DNA of 64,000 nt from IMGVR_UViG_3300042482_000702:248001-312000; one strand, 5' to 3'. Shown: positions 13,532 to 45,392, numbered from the stretch's first letter. Made by a program: numbers and translations. Notes: generated from the letters alone by a model not told the origin.

Positions 13532-13940
13532 GGGAGTGACACGGAATTGACTATTCGTAATAGTTATTCGGGGCACGTAGTGAGATGTTCTCTATCACTT
13601 AAATCTATGGGTACAACAATTTAGACGGAAACGTTTTAAACAAAATGGCTCTAGTAGGTCTTGTACGTCAAGATGAGCTTGTGAACGTAGCGTAAGCAAA
13701 CACACATTGGGGTCGACGGATATGTGTACCTAGCAACAGAAATATCTTAAGGTGTGATACCACCCGAAGAGTGTCAAGGTCTCGTTTGAGGGTCTACCTA
13801 TTAAAGTGAACCTCCCACAGTTGTAGGTAATGATGGAAAAATTAGAACCTTCTATTTGTCAGTTGAGAATTAACTGAATAAACGTGTAGTCCTTAATAGG
13901 TAATACAAATAACACTTGGGTTCGAGTCCCAACACTTCCA
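13532..13940 (+). ncRNA. ssrA: tmRNA
   Basis: Acceptor GGGAGTG/CACTTCC with G3-U70; 5' GGAATTGAC; T-arm TTGGG-TTCGAGT-CCCAA; internal tag ORF 13627..13695; smpB nearby. Confidence 0.92.
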
Positions 13941-14065
13941 CGTCCACTGGAGAGTCCCAACACCTCCACACAAAAAAGAGACCTAAATGGTCTCTTTTTT
14001 TATTGATAATCACCAATAAAAAAACCACCCGAAGGTGGCTTATTATCAGTTCAAATGTTTATTTT

Positions 14066-14998: not shown

Positions 14999-15883
14999 GG
15001 CTTAATACGATGAGAATACTCGTCTTATTGAGAATCTTCGGAAGGATTATTGTTTCCCTTCGTTTCCACCATCTTTTGAATGGTAACCCTCATTGCCGAT
15101 TGGTTAGACCAATCACTCCTTGAGATATCATCTACTCTCTCATTATTCAACTCTCTTTAACCTTGCGAGCTAACTCCGGATTCGACTCCGTAGAGGTTTT
15201 TGGCGAGAATACATTCAGACTTGCGGTCATCCTGTGCAACGAACGGCTCGTTACTATGTAGGCAACTTGTCGACGATACCTGGTAAACATTTTTGCTATT
15301 GTCTATTTAGTTTTTCACCATATGAAAATAGTTAATGTGTTGTGGATGTATTCAGGAAGTAGTTTACCGTAAGCTCCCTAACCTTTTGGGTTAAAGAATA
15401 CTAAACTTCCCGATGAGATATCCCTATCTCCAAATTTCAAGAATTCTTCAAATCAATATCTTGGTAGATATTTGATAGGGATAAAGTCAGCACCACCTGT
15501 TACTTAATCTTGCCTTTCGGCGTTAAGATTCCTTTTATTTTGGAACCCGCAATTATAAGGTCGGATAACCCTATTTCTTACTTGATTCCTATGGGTTCTT
15601 CTTATCTTGATTCCTCAATCAACCGGACAATCCACATTGCCAAGTTAGTATTCCATTTCCCTACGAAGTTATCCTCGGTACTACAGGACTACTAATATCC
15701 CACTTGCTTACTCGAGTTCGGTTTCCCAAACCACAAAATCACTAACACAAATGATTTCATTTTATCCCCGTTTCCGGGATTATTTAAAGATGATAAGCCA
15801 CCTATTATCTTTGATACAACACCGAAGTGTTATAATGGATAATCTAAAATTTCTAAGAACGTCTTTAAGGTTTCCCTTAATTG
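14963..15883 (-). ncRNA. Large (~920 nt) structured ncRNA, GOLLD-like candidate
   Basis: No credible ORF; own TAnnTTTG promoter (15889-15896) and terminator; many minus-strand GNRA/UUCG-capped hairpins. Confidence 0.7.
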
Positions 15884-16044: not shown

Positions 16045-16136
16045 GTGGTATCAGATGGATTCGAACCACCGGCACAGGGTTTTTCAGAACCCTTGCTCTA
16101 CCAAGGAAGATAAATCTCCCACTGAGCTATAATACC
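16045..16136 (-). tRNA. Atypical tRNA-Phe-like (GAA) with a hairpin inserted in the D-loop and an irregular anticodon loop
   Basis: Acceptor GGTATTA/TGATACC, normal T-arm, D-loop insert GGGAGATTTATCTTCC, anticodon arm AGGGT-TCTGAAAA-ACCCT. Confidence 0.6.
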
Positions 16137-16530: not shown

Positions 16531-16607
16531 TAGTCAGAACAGGATTCGAACCTGTGTACCCTCGTATGAGTTCGTCATACCGTGCATCTCCAATGTGCTA
16601 CCTGACT
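16531..16607 (-). ncRNA. tRNA-like RNA with non-canonical anticodon arm
   Basis: Acceptor AGTCAGG/TCTGACT and perfect T-arm ACAGG-TTCGAAT-CCTGT; anticodon arm TATGA-CGAAC-TCATA lacks U33. Confidence 0.55.
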
Positions 16608-34381: not shown

Positions 34382-34421
34382 AATTATGGGTTTTTAATGA
34401 ACCCATAAAACATATGTCAAT

Positions 34422-34655
34422 TTATTGGTGGTGCTTAATGTACCTCCCAAATTTATCAACCCTCACAGAGAGTTTCTCCAATCTAAAGTTCCAATTATCG
34501 AACTTTCCTAAGCCAGATTTTACTCTCGCCTGTTTAACCGCAGATACTTCTGCCTTCTCACGTCCTTCTTCCGTAGTTTCTACGAAAAAAGTGGGAGCCT
34601 GAACACCAGTCTTACTGGTAGGGACTACTCTCCAAATTCTCAATTTCTGAGTCAT
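34422..34655 (-). CDS. Small hypothetical protein in tRNA array
   Basis: ORF track. Confidence 0.55.
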   Translation of the reverse strand: MTQKLRIWRVVPTSKTGVQAPTFFVETTEEGREKAEVSAVKQARVKSGLGKFDNWNFRLEKLSVRVDKFGRYIKHHQ

Positions 34656-34830
34656 AAATTTTAGCTAATAGCTAAAACTATGTGGAGTTGGGTTGGTTGT
34701 TTTTCATATTAATTAGTTTAATTTTTTAAATAAAATGATGTTTAAATCTCCAAGTAAAAAAAAATACTGTTATTAGTAGTATTATCTTTATTACCTTAAT
34801 AATCTTTTTTCCCATATTGATAATATTTTG

Positions 34831-34915: not shown

Positions 34916-35135
34916 GTGTTCCCCCAATGAGATTAGTTTGGGGTAGAATTTTTTCGGTTTTTCTATTCAAAAGTCGAGACGGTCTTACCCGCACATAAAA
35001 GTCAACTATTACTTGGAGGTGAGTTAGTATGCTCCCTTTTTTCCAAAGACCTCATCTATCAAACCGTTTGAGGCGTCAGCTACATCTTTGTTTAAGAAAC
35101 GATGCCAAATCTCTTGAGTATCTCTATCTCAATTG

Positions 35136-36266: not shown

Positions 36267-36399
36267 AGTTTAGATGAACTTCGGACTTGTGTACCGAAAT
36301 GAGACCCAATAATTAAATCACTAACCCCGGGTGTGGTCTATTCATCTATTTTTTTAAGCTTATACCTTTAAAATAAATTTTAATTTTAAGCTTATAAGC

Positions 36400-36573
36400 T
36401 TAAACTTTCGTTTTAAGGTTGTTAATCTCCTTCTCGATTCTTTTCTTATCAGAATCAGTTAAAGGAATCTTGGTATTCATAGTACCCTTTTCGGTTTTTA
36501 CACCATTTTTTAATTGTTTCTCCAACACTTCAAGAACTCTTTGTTGTCTTGACCTTTTCGCTGCTGTTGCCAT
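36400..36573 (-). CDS. Small basic protein (57 aa, not in ORF track)
   Basis: MATAAKRSRQQRVLEVLEKQLK...INNLKTKV. Confidence 0.55.
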   Translation of the reverse strand: MATAAKRSRQQRVLEVLEKQLKNGVKTEKGTMNTKIPLTDSDKKRIEKEINNLKTKV

Positions 36574-36595
36574 ACGGATTTAGTTATTAAATTAG

Positions 36596-36668
36596 TAGCG
36601 TAGGGCAGGTAACGCTCCTGCTTTGGTCGGCTTATGAGACCGATGAGATACTATACCTCCCCCTCGCG
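36596..36668 (-). tRNA. tRNA-Met(CAT), initiator-like
   Basis: C1 mismatched with position 72; loop CTCATAA; T-loop AGCGTTA. Confidence 0.7.
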
Positions 36669-36683
36669 ATGTATTATTTTTTG

Positions 36684-38395: not shown

Positions 38396-38532
38396 AAAAA
38401 AAAAATCCACCTTTTTTTGAAGATGGATTTTTAAATATTTTTTTACTTAAATATATATCATACCATCGTCTTCCAAGTTGTATCTCTACCCTCAGTTCCC
38501 GCTATCGTAAGTAATATGTTTAAAGTTTGCAT
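38396..38532 (-). promoter_or_regulatory. Leader peptide (38458..38532) plus terminator: putative attenuator
   Basis: 24-aa ORF MQTLNILLTIAGTEGRDTTWKTMV; GAAGA/GATGG in the ORF can pair with the terminator arm CCATCTTC. Confidence 0.5.
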
Positions 38533-38662
38533 TTTTTGTGTTATTGTAATTTCTAATAAATATACGACATTTTGTGAAAGTGTCAAGTGGTTTTAAAATT
38601 ATTTTTTAAACTTAATCATAATTTAAGATATTTATAGTAAATAAACTTTTAAAAATTCAATT

Positions 38663-38833
38663 ATGAATAAAGAACAAATTTTTGGTGTTATTCGCCACGT
38701 ATTCACTGCCATTGGTGGTATTGTCATTGCACAAGGTTACATATCTGATAGTATGTACACTGAATTATCCGGAGCGATATTAACATTAACTGGTGTAATT
38801 TGGTCAATTGTTGCTAAAAAATCTACAGTATAA
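38663..38833 (+). CDS. Small two-TM putative holin (56 aa, not in ORF track)
   Basis: MNKEQIFGVIRHVFTAIGG...GVIWSIVAKK; TATTTATA upstream. Confidence 0.65.
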   Translation: MNKEQIFGVIRHVFTAIGGIVIAQGYISDSMYTELSGAILTLTGVIWSIVAKKSTV

Positions 38834-39597
38834 TAAACAGAAAAAGGTTAGAGAAATCTAACCTTTTTTTATGCCTTTAAGTTAAATAAAAAAAAGCTTA
38901 ACAACCCCGCCCTCGGGTCGTAGCGGGCAACTTGAGAATTACTTCTCGTGGGAATTCCGGAATTGGTTGTGTTCCTCACCGGCGTACCAGTCCTTATCTA
39001 TCCTTTAACCGTATTTCTACGGTGCTACTGTTGGGAGGTCACCCCTATCAACACACCTAGTCCATTAGTTTTTTAGAGTATGGACACCCCGGTTGTTAAA
39101 CTTTTTAATTTAATATTCTCTTACATAACGGCGATTATCGCCGGTATTAACCTAATTGGTAAATAAAAAAACAGACAATGGGGATTCTCCGATATTTCAG
39201 TCTTAGGGGACTAGACGGGCATCATACCCGTGTTTACCCTCGGCGGTCTCTTGGTTTGGTTGATTACTCCAAACCTCACCCCTACACTACCACTGACGTA
39301 AGTTATAGGTCTGTTTTTAATTCTTTGTAAAACAACAGACGGCTTTGAAGTACATCCACACCAACAATTATGACCGACTTCACCTTATGTGGAAGTTTAG
39401 TTTTACAATATCTATCAAGATTTACCCCAGTCTTTAGGTCGCTATTAATACCTTTAACCCATACTCTCGGAACACTATGGAGATGGAATCAAACCATCTA
39501 ATAACCCGTCGGTTATAGCGTCAGCCTTATATTTCCTATCTTTTGGAGATAACTTTCGTCTGTCACCTTATTCAACCTTATATGAATAAATCTTTTG

Positions 39598-39704
39598 CCC
39601 TTCCAGTGGGAATCGAACCCACATACTCTTAATACATTCTTGGAATGGTTACCGGAGGGAGATGTATTCGTCTCTGTGTTTTGCTCTTTTTAAACTACAG
39701 AAGG
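39598..39704 (-). ncRNA. tRNA-like RNA with an expanded anticodon arm
   Basis: Acceptor CCTTCTG/TGGAAGG; D- and T-arms present; about 55-nt central region with AATACAT/ATGTATT helix. Confidence 0.55.
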
Positions 39705-39710
39705 ATTTTG

Positions 39711-39781
39711 CACGTTTGATAGGTCTCGAACCCATACAAATTCTTTTGGAGAGAATTATGCTACCATTACATCACAAACGT
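39711..39781 (-). tRNA. tRNA-Trp(CCA)
   Basis: Loop CTCCAAA. Confidence 0.9.
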
Positions 39782-39782
39782 A

Positions 39783-40430
39783 TTATTTTAACCATTTTCT
39801 AACAGCGTTATCACTAACACCATATTTACGACCTGTTCCTCTATACCCAAGATTAATAATATCTTGTTTTATTTGTTCTATGGACGGTCTTTCAACTTTT
39901 CTATTTTGTTTATTTGAACATTTAATACATTTATCACTTTTTTTATCTTTTGTACTACCACATTCACAATGATATTTAATTTTATTGGATTTCCCGGAAT
40001 ATGTACTAGTTTGGGAGTGACAATTAGGACATAAAAATCTTAAATTTTCTATTCTATTATCATTATTAACTCCATTTATATGGTCTAAATGTAGACTAAT
40101 ATTTTTACCATTCCACACCCCATTATTACCACATTCAATACATTTATATTCAAGTAAATTTTTCTTTAATATTCTATTTTTAATTTTTTGTCTTGGAAAT
40201 GTTGAATTTTCAACAAAAACATCCTCATCTAATCTAACCTCTTTAGGTCCAGTCCCATAATAATTATATTTAGGAATCTCTAATCCCAATTTAATTATTC
40301 TATCTTTAATGTTCCTATAACCACCCGAACCATTTGGTGATAAATTAAATAATAAAATAACCTCTCTCATAGATTTTGAATTATTCAAAATTTCAAATAA
40401 CTCTTCTTTTGTAATAGTTTTTAAGTTCAT
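39783..40430 (-). CDS. HNH homing endonuclease inside the tRNA array
   Basis: CIECG...LHLDHINGVNNDNRIENLRFLCPNCHSQT; C-terminal HTH. Confidence 0.9.
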   Translation of the reverse strand: MNLKTITKEELFEILNNSKSMREVILLFNLSPNGSGGYRNIKDRIIKLGLEIPKYNYYGTGPKEVRLDEDVFVENSTFPRQKIKNRILKKNLLEYKCIECGNNGVWNGKNISLHLDHINGVNNDNRIENLRFLCPNCHSQTSTYSGKSNKIKYHCECGSTKDKKSDKCIKCSNKQNRKVERPSIEQIKQDIINLGYRGTGRKYGVSDNAVRKWLK

Positions 40431-40661
40431 ATTATGTCTTTTATTATAAATATCTTAAAAAATACCAAAGTTCACCATAACCTATGTTTTACCAAAAATA
40501 ATAACATAATCATTCGTAGTCCCCTGCCGGGCAACCCTCCTACTTTTTCACACAATCCGGATGCCTCCAAATCTAATTTTCTTTTTTACCCCTATTAAGA
40601 AACGCGTTTTCCGTTCGGTAGTTCAAGCCCATTTTCGTGAGTTAAATAATTATGTTATTTG

Positions 40662-40805: not shown

Positions 40806-41186
40806 TTAATAACCTATTTCATCTTTAACCTCCCATTGTTTATCAATGGGGATTCTTTCAATCTTTTCCACCGGAACAAATCCGTCAAATCCTTTGTCTT
40901 TAACATCTTCAAAATGTTCTATGGTGTCCAAGTAAAATCCAAATTGATATCTAACGTATTGGAACTTCTCTCCGTCCCAATAAGCGACGTGGTTGTTTCT
41001 ACAGAAACCATTATACCACCCCTCAACCATTTCATTTTTTGGTATCATCATTTCTATTTTTATATTAGCACCCTTGTCTATATAGCCTGAATCTCTCAAG
41101 CGCCATGCCTTATTAGGGTCTCTATATAAACTTAGGGTCACGTAGTTACTGGATGAACCCAAATAACTTACTTGCTGAGAACTCAT
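40806..41186 (-). CDS. Hypothetical protein (true start probably downstream, near MIPKNEM)
   Basis: ORF; the annotated 5' end overlaps an RNA motif. Confidence 0.55.
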   Translation of the reverse strand: MSSQQVSYLGSSSNYVTLSLYRDPNKAWRLRDSGYIDKGANIKIEMMIPKNEMVEGWYNGFCRNNHVAYWDGEKFQYVRYQFGFYLDTIEHFEDVKDKGFDGFVPVEKIERIPIDKQWEVKDEIGY

Positions 41187-41250
41187 TTGTGTTGATAGAG
41201 GCGTTCTCTATACGTTTAATTTACCTATTCCTTTCTCAAGGGAACAACAC
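41171..41250 (-). ncRNA. Pseudoknotted scaffold RNA, copy A
   Basis: GTGTTGTTCCCTTGAGAAAGGAA-[insert]-AACACAAATGAGTTCTCAG. Confidence 0.65.
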
Positions 41251-41547
41251 ATCTACCATTTCTGATAGTATCTTTATGTAAATAACCAAGACAATTGTAC
41301 AAATGCTACCACGTATTTCTTTGGTTCACTTATTATTTACAAAGGTTTCAATGTTTAACCTATTTTTACAACGATACAATTACATTTCTACTTTTGAGAA
41401 TCTTTCTCAAAAAAACTAATCTTTTTCTATGATTAACATACTCATCAGCATCATTGGCTTTATGACCTCTAAATATTGATTCGGTTATCTCACAATCCAA
41501 TTTAATAATTTCGGTTATTATCTCCTCCGTGGTTAAATTACTTTTTT

Positions 41548-45249: not shown

Positions 45250-45392
45250 AATTAAAATGATGGTGAGATACCCGTTTCGTCTCACTCTTGACTGCTTAAT
45301 AGTAGTTTTACTGTGCACAGGCAGAGGGTTATAATTTCGTTTATTGTAATCAGAATTGTCGACATTCTTTCATACAGAAATTCATCATTTTG

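What the first reader, a model, noticed from the sequence alone, without database searches (positions are those of the whole stretch)
38898..39563. Three back-to-back multi-branch ncRNA candidates ending the second array
38898-39099 (TTAACAACC/GGTTGTTAA), 39167-39318 (AAAAACAGAC/GTCTGTTTTT) and 39335-39563 (ACAGACG/CGTCTGT, with an internal T-arm-like AGATGG-TTTGATT-CCATCT). Each is GC-richer than the genome, ORF-free and full of hairpins. Together with the others, the tRNA arrays act as a polycistronic carrier for about ten unknown RNAs.
Basis: seen in the sequence. Interest (0 to 1): 0.65.

Follow-up and report, generated by a model that had tools for sequence, protein, structure and literature searches.

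The report
Unknown structured RNAs in phage tRNA island
At the end of a tRNA gene cluster, an uncultured 322-kb lake phage encodes two conserved, intricately folded non-coding RNAs that match no catalogued family, plus a third patchwork element; they resemble phage T4's long-unexplained small stable RNAs, and their function is unknown.

Summary

- **c1 (38898-39099):** a real structured RNA of about 205 nt. I found 45 distinct homologs in lake viromes and metagenomes. 98.8% of cells pair, and 21 pairs carry compensatory changes against 6.7 in shuffles. The fold includes two pseudoknots. Two independent RNA libraries hold contigs that match c1 almost end to end.
- **c2 (39167-39318):** also conserved and structured, with 17 variants and 10 covarying pairs, though its inner fold is unresolved.
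- **c3 (39335-39563):** not one conserved multi-branch RNA. It is a mosaic of a variable 5' part and an 84-nt 3' core that is 100% identical in every context. The terminal stem is not consistently kept.

None matches Rfam 15, deposited phages or cellular genomes. In relatives the modules occur independently, always within tRNA arrays and sometimes 4-10 nt from a tRNA. Four complete related phages lack c1.

The best reading is that these are accessory stable RNAs matured from the tRNA operon transcript. They are analogous, not homologous, to T4 rnaC/rnaD and to GOLLD/ROOL near tRNA islands. Their function is unknown.

The parts
38896..39101 (-). c1 RNA, about 205 nt. P1 closing stem 39101-39091 with 38906-38896. 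H-type pseudoknot: S1 39090-39086 with 39079-39075, and S2 39085-39080 with 39065-39060. P3 hairpin 39053-39029. Long-range pseudoknot PK2 39028-39024 with 38924-38920. Variable hairpin P4 39023-39008. P5 38982-38979 with 38960-38957, plus a covarying 2-bp P5b. Variable GNRA hairpin P6 38947-38934. A U-tract follows P1.
   Evidence: 45 distinct homologs; 98.8% of cells paired; 21 pairs with changes on both sides, 0 of 500 shuffles reach this. Model R1 scores 257 bits on minus and 16 on plus. RNA-library contigs at 38910-39095 (X16) and 38908-39139 (X18).
39129..39143 (-). Conserved palindromic spacer hairpin (CGGCGAT-t-ATCGCCG) between c2 and c1
   Evidence: Present just upstream of c1 in many relatives, including L082, L358, L350, L276, L002 and L088. 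One spacer variant repeats the sequence of c1's P4 hairpin.
39167..39318 (-). c2 RNA, about 152 nt. P1 (ACAGAC/GUCUGU extended by A/U runs), a P2 two-part hairpin with a D-arm-like loop, long-range P3 (GGGG/CCCC), and two hairpins with covariation. The central fold is unresolved: two alternative pairings fit equally well.
   Evidence: 17 distinct homologs; 97.1% of cells paired; 10 pairs with changes on both sides against 4.6 in shuffles, 0 of 500. RNA contig 39187-39378 in X16.
39330..39413 (-). c3 invariant core: 84 nt, identical in every context found
   Evidence: 100% identity in L002/L003, L082, L221, the L088 group and L358, while neighbouring c2 and c1 differ by 12-15% in L088 and L221. 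Folding is no better than shuffles, z = +0.3.
   Evidence: L002, L082 and L221 carry a tRNA-like insert with a canonical TTCGATT T-loop in its place. The L088 group carries a 65-nt hairpin module. In L358 tRNA-Trp abuts the core directly.
39597..39700 (-). Non-canonical tRNA-like gene ('tl') between tRNA-Trp and c3
   Evidence: Has an acceptor stem, a D-arm and a canonical T-arm, but an aberrant central hairpin. ARAGORN and the Rfam tRNA model do not call it. Homologs occur in L002/L003, L350 and L276.
39710..39781 (-). tRNA-Trp (CCA), the tRNA that precedes the RNA modules
   Evidence: ARAGORN and Rfam. The order tRNA-Cys, tRNA-Trp, [c3], [c2], [c1] is kept in relatives.
38841..38868 (.). Bidirectional intrinsic terminator just downstream of c1. 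It is shared with the converging + strand gene 38663-38833.
   Evidence: Terminator-like site with 12 pairs. This terminator follows c1 in the relatives that hold this flank (L082, L002, L358, L276, L287, L264); the ORF and terminator stretch is an insertion present in about 18 loci.

Best explanation
**What they are.** c1 and c2 are two independent genes for stable, intricately folded non-coding RNAs that belong to no family in Rfam 15 or in the literature I could search. c3 is a mosaic that carries an invariant 84-nt RNA segment. All three are encoded on the tRNA strand at the 3' end of a tRNA sub-cluster in an uncultured freshwater jumbo phage.

**How they are made (inferred).**
- They are transcribed with the tRNAs as one precursor.
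- Their 5' ends arise when the upstream tRNA or tRNA-like RNA is cut out by the host's tRNA-processing nucleases.
- Their 3' ends arise either from cleavage at the next tRNA or from termination at the U-tract that directly follows the closing P1 stem.
- P1, lengthened by flanking A and U runs, clamps both ends and should protect the RNA from exonucleases.

**How they act (speculative).** The mature RNAs probably act in trans during infection as accessory factors. The likeliest mode is binding a protein, a host RNA machine (translation or RNA processing) or a defence factor through their invariant junctions and pseudoknotted core. This is the same unresolved role as T4 rnaC/rnaD and GOLLD/ROOL.

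**Status of each step.**
- Shown: conservation, structure, strand, modular synteny, and presence in RNA libraries.
- Inferred: co-transcription and the maturation route.
- Speculative: the molecular function.
For: **Structure**
- c1: 45 variants, 98.8% of cells paired, 21 compensatory pairs in 12 helices. These include S1/S2 (an H-type pseudoknot) and PK2, which has four different complementary versions. 0 of 500 shuffles reach the observed values.
- c2: 10 compensatory pairs, 0 of 500 shuffles.

**Strand**
- The c1 model scores 257 bits on minus and 16 bits on plus.
- Helix S1 relies on G.U pairs that would be C.A mismatches on the other strand.

**Not coding**
- Hairpins of 7 and 15-16 nt come and go between relatives.

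**Context**
- The order tRNA-Cys, tRNA-Trp, [c3], [c2], [c1] on the tRNA strand is kept in about 20 contigs, and each module is present or absent independently.
- c1 starts 9-10 nt after a tRNA 3' end in many relatives. In L164/L205 it ends 6 nt before tRNA-Ser.
- In L005, c2 ends 4 nt before tRNA-Tyr.
- A U-tract directly after P1 is kept in 40 of 45 c1 sequences. In several relatives a promoter-like TTGACA box or a gene start follows within about 20 nt.

**Expression**
- In metatranscriptome X16, contigs lie on c1 (38910-39095, depth 21.5), on c2 with the c3 core, on the c3 5' part with tl, and on tRNA-Asp. None lie on the flanking ORFs.
- Transcriptome X18 holds only c1.

**Precedents**
- T4 has rnaD and rnaC directly after tRNA-Arg at the end of its tRNA cluster, with a homing endonuclease gene in the cluster.
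- GOLLD and ROOL are phage RNAs often near tRNA islands (PMC12286853).
- This same phage also carries a GOLLD RNA and a tmRNA.
Against: - Nothing here reveals a function or a binding partner.
- The RNA evidence consists of assembled contigs. They show neither strand, ends nor abundance, and DNA carry-over in RNA libraries cannot be excluded. X15 covers every part of the stretch.
- Four related jumbo phage genomes, at least 90% complete, lack c1 altogether. It is therefore dispensable for this phage group.
- Most c1 and c2 homologs are close relatives: the effective sequence number of the c1 model is 1.37. Many compensatory cells may trace back to few evolutionary events.
- c3 does not behave as a structured RNA in any test.
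Confidence: 0.6

Rival explanations
1. The elements are cis-acting parts of the tRNA operon. They would serve as terminators, insulators or processing scaffolds that end the transcript (P1 plus U-tract) and guide nuclease cuts, with no role as free RNAs.
For: c1, c2 and c3 each end in a stem followed by a U-run. In most relatives c1 is the last element before a promoter-like box or a new gene. The modules are dispensable.
Against: Two covarying pseudoknots, about 23 invariant junction nucleotides and covarying internal helices far exceed what a terminator needs. In L164/L205, c1 sits inside a tight tRNA array 6 nt before tRNA-Ser, where termination would be harmful, and there its U-tract is interrupted. 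In X16, c1 has a higher contig depth than the upstream c2 and c3.
Confidence: 0.15
2. c1 and/or c2 are ligand- or RNA-sensing attenuators (riboswitch-like). Folding of the core would let P1 zip up at the U-tract and so set read-through into downstream genes.
For: The pseudoknotted core with invariant junctions is aptamer-like. P1's 3' strand abuts a U-tract. In many relatives a gene start follows c1 within about 20 nt on the same strand.
Against: In the window, c1 is followed by a separate terminator and a converging gene. The downstream genes differ between relatives. There is no alternative anti-terminator pairing with covariation; the one competing hairpin is broken by the change that preserves P1 in L139. 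No known riboswitch class matches.
Confidence: 0.08
3. The elements are decaying remnants of tRNA genes or other junk between tRNAs, kept only because the phages are closely related.
For: The 5' part of c3 does hold a degenerate tRNA-like piece. A non-canonical tRNA-like gene lies next door. c2's P2 loop resembles a D-loop.
Against: c1 and c2 keep their pairing through compensatory changes and hairpin swaps at 77-88% identity, and in distant contigs where the flanks are unrelated. The c3 core is invariant where its neighbours diverge by 12-15%. The Rfam tRNA model gives no hit.
Confidence: 0.05
4. One or more of the elements is a self-cleaving ribozyme that helps cut the polycistronic tRNA transcript.
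For: The fold is a compact pseudoknotted one with invariant junction nucleotides, and the elements sit in a transcript that must be cut many times.
Against: No match to any ribozyme family in Rfam, even at E up to 10. The topology (an outer P1 enclosing everything) resembles none of the known small self-cleavers. tRNA-processing enzymes already explain the cuts.
Confidence: 0.05
5. The elements are miniature mobile DNA elements (MITE-like) with terminal inverted repeats, inserted between tRNA genes.
For: They have terminal inverted repeats of 7-16 bp and show presence/absence polymorphism between relatives.
Against: Each occurs as a single copy in the 322-kb genome. I saw no target-site duplications when reading the c1 flanks. 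Internal helices and pseudoknots covary, and G.U pairs make the signal strand-specific.
Confidence: 0.03

Closest known systems
Phage T4 rnaC and rnaD (species 1 and species 2 small stable RNAs)
   Same: Both are small stable RNAs of unknown function. Both are encoded on the tRNA strand directly after the last tRNA of the phage tRNA cluster, and in both cases a homing endonuclease gene lies inside the cluster. In T4, rnaD starts 1 nt after tRNA-Arg and rnaC 6 nt after rnaD. That they are matured with the tRNAs is my own recollection of the 1970s T4 literature; I did not check it here.
   Different: No sequence or model similarity: blastn finds only chance 7-13-mers, and model R1 finds nothing in the T4 region. 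T4 rnaC has a tRNA-like T-arm and acceptor at its 3' end, and the annotated rnaD gene ends in CCA. c1-c3 have neither. The neighbouring element 'tl' is the closer analogue of rnaC.
GOLLD and ROOL RNAs
   Same: Both are ornate, pseudoknotted phage or prophage RNAs of unknown function, often beside tRNA islands (PMC12286853). This phage carries a GOLLD RNA 24 kb away at 15007-15413.
   Different: c1-c3 measure 150-230 nt, against about 580 to over 800 nt. They do not match the Rfam models. Whether they oligomerise is untested. c1 does hold an invariant self-complementary AAUUC (GAAUUC in about a third of the variants) in its P5 internal loop.
Bacterial Y RNAs (YrlA) with Ro/Rsr
   Same: Both have a long stem formed by the 5' and 3' ends that closes a complex domain. 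Y RNAs also occur in some phages (my own recollection).
   Different: The phage genome has no TROVE (Ro) or RtcB gene. There is no Rfam match. c1 and c2 have no tRNA-like domain.
tRNA and tRNA-like RNAs
   Same: They share the operon and the strand. c3's variable part contains a T-arm-like hairpin, and relatives carry a tRNA-like insert with a canonical T-loop at that place.
   Different: c1 and c2 have no cloverleaf. c3's hairpin has UUUGAUU in place of UUCGAUU and does not adjoin an acceptor stem. Neither ARAGORN nor the Rfam tRNA model calls any of them.
Catalogue of about 8,500 candidate structured RNAs from IMG/VR (PMC10690425)
   Same: It draws on the same data source (IMG/VR intergenic regions) and uses the same kind of evidence (covariation).
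   Different: Its candidates are 29-151 nt long (mean 67), so shorter than c1. Its alignments are not held here, so I could not check whether pieces of c1 or c2 are listed.

Membership tests
Any Rfam 15 family (4227 models, including 6S, SRP, RNase P, tmRNA, riboswitches, ribozymes, ROOL, GOLLD, HEARO, raiA, Y RNA) | Covariance-model match at the gathering score, or at least a weak match | tested here: not met
   No match on either strand of 38898-39563, either at gathering score or at E up to 10 with lax filters.
tRNA | Cloverleaf with acceptor, D, anticodon and T arms, detected by ARAGORN or RF00005 | tested here: not met
   No call within 38898-39700. The T-arm-like hairpin at 39481-39499 is isolated and degenerate.
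T4 rnaC/rnaD-type stable RNAs | Encoded on the tRNA strand directly after the tRNAs at the end of the phage tRNA cluster | tested here: met
   T4 layout; window layout; relatives.
T4 rnaC/rnaD-type stable RNAs | Sequence or structure homology to T4 rnaC or rnaD | tested here: not met
   blastn finds only 7-13-nt chance matches. Model R1 finds nothing in the T4 region.
T4 rnaC/rnaD-type stable RNAs | tRNA-like 3' end (T-arm and acceptor, encoded CCA) | tested here: not met
   c1, c2 and c3 end in P1 plus a U-run. T4 rnaC and rnaD end in T-arm/acceptor and CCA.
GOLLD / ROOL | Match to RF02032 or the ROOL model; length over 500 nt | tested here: not met
   GOLLD matches only at 15007-15413. Nothing matches in the finding. 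The elements are 150-230 nt long.
GOLLD / ROOL | Homo-oligomeric RNA-only assembly | not testable with these tools
   Needs native gels or cryo-EM.
Bacterial Y RNA (YrlA) | Ro/Rsr (TROVE) gene, usually with RtcB, in the same genome | tested here: not met
   PF05731 and PF01139 are absent from the 322-kb genome, while the control genomes gave matches.
Retron or RT-templated ncRNA | Reverse transcriptase gene in the genome | tested here: not met
   PF00078 is absent.
Intrinsic terminator | Stem directly followed by a U-tract | tested here: inconclusive
   P1 of c1 is followed by 6-8 U in 40 of 45 variants. However, P1 closes a domain of about 190 nt, and in L139/L205 the tract is interrupted. 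A canonical terminator follows at 38841-38868.
MITE-like mobile element | Many dispersed copies with terminal inverted repeats | tested here: not met
   Each element is a single copy in the whole genome.
Riboswitch | Consistent position in the 5' leader of a functionally related gene set | tested here: not met
   In the window, c1 is followed by a terminator and a converging gene. Relatives have differing downstream genes, or tRNAs.

The most novel reading that the evidence does not exclude
c1 (and perhaps c2) is a new class of functional RNA with an activity of its own. Candidates are a decoy or inhibitor of a host defence or RNA-processing enzyme, a ligand-binding or catalytic RNA, or a self-assembling RNA particle like ROOL and GOLLD. 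Jumbo phages would deliver it by hitch-hiking on tRNA processing. The 84-nt c3 core, invariant at every base, would be a third RNA whose whole length is constrained by a partner.
Probability: 0.15. Interest if true: 0.8.

Novelty: new member of a known kind. Interest (0 to 1): 0.55.

Why it matters
Phage tRNA islands are known to hold enigmatic RNAs: T4 rnaC/rnaD for fifty years, and GOLLD and ROOL more recently. None has a known function. c1 is compact (about 205 nt), has two pseudoknots and is supported by covariation. It is expressed in lake metatranscriptomes. It is small enough for structure probing, cryo-EM and pull-downs.

c1, c2 and the c3 core behave as shuffled modules inserted between tRNAs. 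This suggests that tRNA operons act as a general expression and maturation platform for accessory RNAs in large phages. If a function were found, such as counter-defence, takeover of translation or RNA assembly, it would probably bear on the older unexplained cases too.

Tried and rejected
- **Rfam:** searches at gathering score and at E up to 10 found nothing in the region.
- **Deposited phages (INPHARED):** no DNA match to the region or to 20 kb around it. The 543-aa neighbouring protein has no match. The terminase is only 28% identical to Microcystis, Flavobacterium and huge-phage terminases, so the host remains unknown.
- **Paralogs:** none of c1-c3 elsewhere in the phage genome. The c1 model does not detect c2 or c3.
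- **c1 model on other loci:** nothing in 84 further related loci.
- **Cellular genomes:** a 17-mer c1 pattern gave 35 hits in 185,579 species genomes. The c1 profile confirmed none of them.
- **c3 core in Bacteroidota:** only 19-24-nt chance matches in 401 genomes.
- **More divergent c3 cores:** a 15-mer scan of viral contigs found none.
- **Partner genes:** Ro/TROVE, RtcB and reverse transcriptase are all absent.
- **Alternative terminator hairpin** at c1's 3' end (38921-38901): rejected, because the substitution that preserves P1 in L139 breaks it.
- **RNAalifold's hairpin CCCGC/GCGGG** near c1's 3' end: set aside in favour of PK2. Only PK2 explains the coordinated changes in the upstream GUAGC segment, which has four complementary versions.
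- **Two pairings for c2's centre** (local hairpin against YUYGG with CCGAG): both stay paired and neither shows double changes, so this is unresolved.
- **A shared 10-nt string** between the c3 core and the 3' region of 16S rRNA as I recall it: judged chance, not tested.
- **The IMG/VR candidate-RNA catalogue:** its supplementary files are not held.

Full report
**Setting**

The window is bases 248001-312000 of a 322,477-bp IMG/VR virus record that CheckV rates complete. It is a jumbo phage with 31.5% GC. Its large terminase is only 28% identical to those of Microcystis and Flavobacterium phages and of metagenomic huge phages. DNA runs that hold the stretch come from lake and freshwater metagenomes.

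About 25 tRNA genes in the window all lie on the minus strand. The phage also carries a GOLLD RNA (15007-15413) and a tmRNA (13532-13943).

Read on the minus strand, the finding sits at the 3' end of one tRNA sub-cluster. The order is:
1. tRNA-Cys
2. an HNH endonuclease ORF
3. tRNA-Trp (39781-39710)
4. a non-canonical tRNA-like gene (39700-39597)
5. c3 (39563-39335)
6. c2 (39318-39167)
7. a small spacer hairpin
8. c1 (39099-38898)
9. a bidirectional terminator (38868-38841), shared with a converging + strand gene

**The observation**

- All quoted inverted repeats and the hairpin are at the stated coordinates.
- GC is raised: 0.485, 0.461 and 0.389, against 0.315 for the genome.
- The terminal repeats alone are no better than chance. 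The window has 90 inverted 9-mers at that spacing, against 98.6 +/- 12 in shuffles.
- Single-sequence folding is only mildly better than shuffles: z = -1.9, -2.0 and -1.0.
- Mechanical ORFs of 42-50 aa overlap each element on the + strand.
- The case therefore rests on comparison with relatives.

**Relatives**

- Nothing similar exists among 50,697 deposited phages or elsewhere in the phage's own genome.
- I fetched related contigs from IMG/VR through two neighbouring proteins and through short conserved DNA patterns, also in JGI metagenomes.
- Profile searches gave 45 distinct c1 sequences, 17 full-length distinct c2 sequences, and six further contexts for c3.
- A c1 pattern scan of 185,579 prokaryote species genomes gave only chance 17-mer hits, and the c1 profile confirmed none.

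**c1**

The alignment shows a highly conserved core. Two hairpins are swapped or deleted between relatives (P4, and P6 with a GNRA loop). That is the classic signature of a structured RNA and is incompatible with coding.

Five divergent members supply compensatory changes in almost every helix. They are L139, L205, L356, L302 and a second copy in L221.

| Helix | Versions seen |
|---|---|
| P1 | a compensatory pair deletion and U-A to C-G |
| S1 | GGGGU/ACUCU, AGAGU/ACUCU, AAGGU/ACCUU, GAGGU/ACCUC, UGGAU/AUCCA |
| S2 (its 5' strand is the loop of S1, hence an H-type pseudoknot) | GUCCAU/AUGGAC, GUCUAU/AUAGAC, GUUUC/GAAAC, UCUGU/ACAGA |
| PK2 (a long-range pairing into a 3' hairpin loop) | GUAGC/GCUAC, GUGAC/GUCAC, GUAGG/CCUAC, GUACC/GGUAC |
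| P5 | CCGG/CCGG, GUGG/CCAC, GGAG/CUCU |
| P5b (2 bp) | five pair types |

On the 45-sequence alignment:
- 98.8% of 2,227 cells form standard pairs, against 93.9% in shuffles.
- 21 of 55 pairs changed on both sides, against 6.7 +/- 1.5. None of 500 shuffles reaches the observed values.
- Sliding the partners by 1-3 columns gives 26-46% pairing and at most 7 such pairs.

The functional strand is the minus strand. The covariance model scores 257 bits there and 16 bits on the + strand, and S1 depends on G.U pairs.

Caveat: most sequences are close relatives. The effective sequence number of the model is 1.37, so the independent evolutionary events are fewer than the cell counts suggest.

**c2**

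- 17 distinct sequences share 88% mean column identity.
- The closing stem, a two-part hairpin with a D-loop-like loop, a long-range GGGG/CCCC helix and two hairpins are kept. GGGG/CCCC becomes GAGG/CCUC and GAUG/CAUU.
- 97.1% of cells pair. Ten pairs changed on both sides, against 4.6 +/- 1.2 in shuffles (0 of 500).
- The centre is unresolved. A local hairpin and an alternative long-range pairing both stay paired without double changes.
- One contig (L228) carries a c2/c1 chimera, probably a deletion between short repeats.

**c3**

This is not one conserved RNA.

- Its 3' 84 nt (39330-39413) are identical in every context found. That includes the L088 group and L221, where c1 and c2 differ from the window by 12-15%.
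- The 5' part varies between contexts:
  - L002/L003, L082 and L221 hold a tRNA-like insert with a canonical TTCGATT T-loop.
  - The L088 group has a different 65-nt hairpin module. In other contigs that module stands directly before c1 or c2, without the core.
  - In L358 the core follows tRNA-Trp directly.
- Folding energies are unremarkable: z = -1.0 for the whole element and +0.3 for the core.
- The total invariance of the core is unexplained. It is not found in 401 sampled Bacteroidota genomes, and its + strand ORF is not conserved beyond the core.

**Context and maturation**

- In about 20 contigs the order tRNA-Cys, tRNA-Trp, [c3], [c2], [c1], then ORFs and tRNA-Glu is kept on one strand. 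Each module is present or absent independently.
- In many relatives c1 begins 9-10 nt after the 3' end of a tRNA. In the distant L164/L205 clade it lies 46 nt after tRNA-Arg and 6 nt before tRNA-Ser. In L005, c2 ends 4 nt before tRNA-Tyr.
- A run of 6-8 U follows P1 of c1 in 40 of 45 variants. In several relatives a TTGACA/TATATT promoter-like box or a gene start follows within about 20 nt. P1 plus the U-tract therefore probably ends the tRNA operon transcript there.
- I infer that the RNAs are made as part of the tRNA precursor and freed by tRNA-processing nucleases and termination, with P1 clamping both ends.

**Expression**

- In freshwater metatranscriptome X16, contigs lie on c1 (38910-39095, one mismatch, depth 21.5), on c2 with the c3 core (39187-39378), on the c3 5' part with the tRNA-like gene (39426-39674), and on tRNA-Asp. 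There is nothing on the flanking protein genes.
- A separate transcriptome, X18, holds a single 245-nt contig covering c1 (38908-39139).
- Contigs do not give strand, ends or level, and DNA carry-over cannot be excluded. This is supportive rather than decisive.

**Function**

- Nothing identifies a partner.
- The genome lacks Ro/TROVE, RtcB and reverse transcriptase.
- Four related jumbo phage genomes at least 90% complete lack c1, so it is an accessory element.
- Features worth testing in c1:
  - the A-rich strand crossing S1;
  - a purine-rich junction of about 23 nt that is nearly invariant;
  - an invariant self-complementary AAUUC (GAAUUC in about a third of the variants) in the P5 internal loop, a possible dimerisation site;
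  - a 7-nt P3 loop whose central URR varies among UGA, UAG and UAA.

**Comparison with known systems**

- The closest analogue in layout is phage T4. There rnaD and rnaC (species 2 and species 1 stable RNAs, function unknown) follow tRNA-Arg at the end of the tRNA cluster, and the segB homing endonuclease gene lies within the cluster.
- There is no homology to those RNAs. The T4 RNAs have tRNA-like or CCA 3' ends that c1-c3 lack. The T4 RNAs are not in Rfam either.
- GOLLD and ROOL are larger ornate phage RNAs, often near tRNA islands and also of unknown function (PMC12286853).
- A catalogue of about 8,500 short candidate RNAs from IMG/VR exists (PMC10690425), but its alignments could not be checked.

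**Verdict**

- c1 and c2 are new RNA families of a known kind: accessory stable RNAs of phage tRNA islands.
- c3 is a mosaic with a puzzling invariant core.
- A crude pass suggests that other inter-tRNA spacers in the window are also conserved and show some compensatory pairs.

Noticed in passing
window 39597-39700 (-): A non-canonical tRNA-like gene. It has a 7-bp acceptor stem with two G.U pairs, a D-arm and a canonical T-arm, but its anticodon/variable region is a long odd hairpin. ARAGORN and Rfam do not call it. Homologs occur in L002/L003, L350 and L276, where the central part differs. It resembles T4 rnaC in having a tRNA-like 3' domain.
   Followed up: partly
window 39783-40430 (-): An HNH endonuclease ORF lies between tRNA-Cys and tRNA-Trp. 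In relatives the two tRNAs are 7-9 nt apart, and a contig in run X15 skips 39714-40659. This looks like a mobile homing-endonuclease insertion, parallel to segB in the T4 tRNA cluster.
   Followed up: partly
window 39330-39413 (-): The 84-nt c3 core is 100% identical in six other contexts, while adjacent RNAs diverge by 12-15%. It has no notable predicted structure and no match in 401 Bacteroidota genomes. Unexplained.
   Followed up: partly
window 38400-38590 (-): A compact unit just downstream of c1: a near-consensus sigma-70-like promoter (TTGACA, 16 nt, TATATT at 38586-38559), a 24-aa ORF and a strong terminator (38432-38401). It is conserved in more than 70 related loci. It could be a small protein gene or an sRNA.
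   Followed up: no
window 38663-38868: A + strand 56-aa membrane-like ORF with a bidirectional terminator. It is present in only about 18 related loci, while both flanks occur in more than 70. This is an inserted gene cassette between c1 and the next unit.
   Followed up: no
window 41109-41275: Very high contig depth (3228) in metatranscriptome X17, and 16-44 in X16, over the start and 5' leader of the 126-aa gene (40806-41186). No Rfam match there. The cause is unknown and may be another organism's sequence.
   Followed up: no
window 34382-34829, 34916-35134, 36267-36682, 45250-45391 (-): Other spacers between tRNA genes are conserved in 7-19 relatives. A crude RNAalifold pass shows 6-16 predicted pairs with compensatory changes. 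These may be further RNAs of the same kind.
   Followed up: partly
L228:13833-14007 (-): A chimera of the first ~115 nt of c2 fused at a shared TAG to the last ~45 nt of c1. It is probably a deletion between adjacent c2 and c1 genes.
   Followed up: no
L093:10398-10462, L313, L148, L346, L272, L191 (upstream of c1): A hairpin module of about 65 nt (GAAGACGGAGAG ... CUCUCCUGAAGAA) follows tRNA-Trp and precedes c1, c2 or the c3 core in different relatives. It is another shuffled RNA module and is absent from the window.
   Followed up: no
window 15007-15413 (-) and 13532-13943 (+): The same phage encodes a GOLLD RNA (288 bits), with tRNA-Pro genes at 16045-16136 and 16531-16607, and a tmRNA (62 bits).
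   Followed up: no
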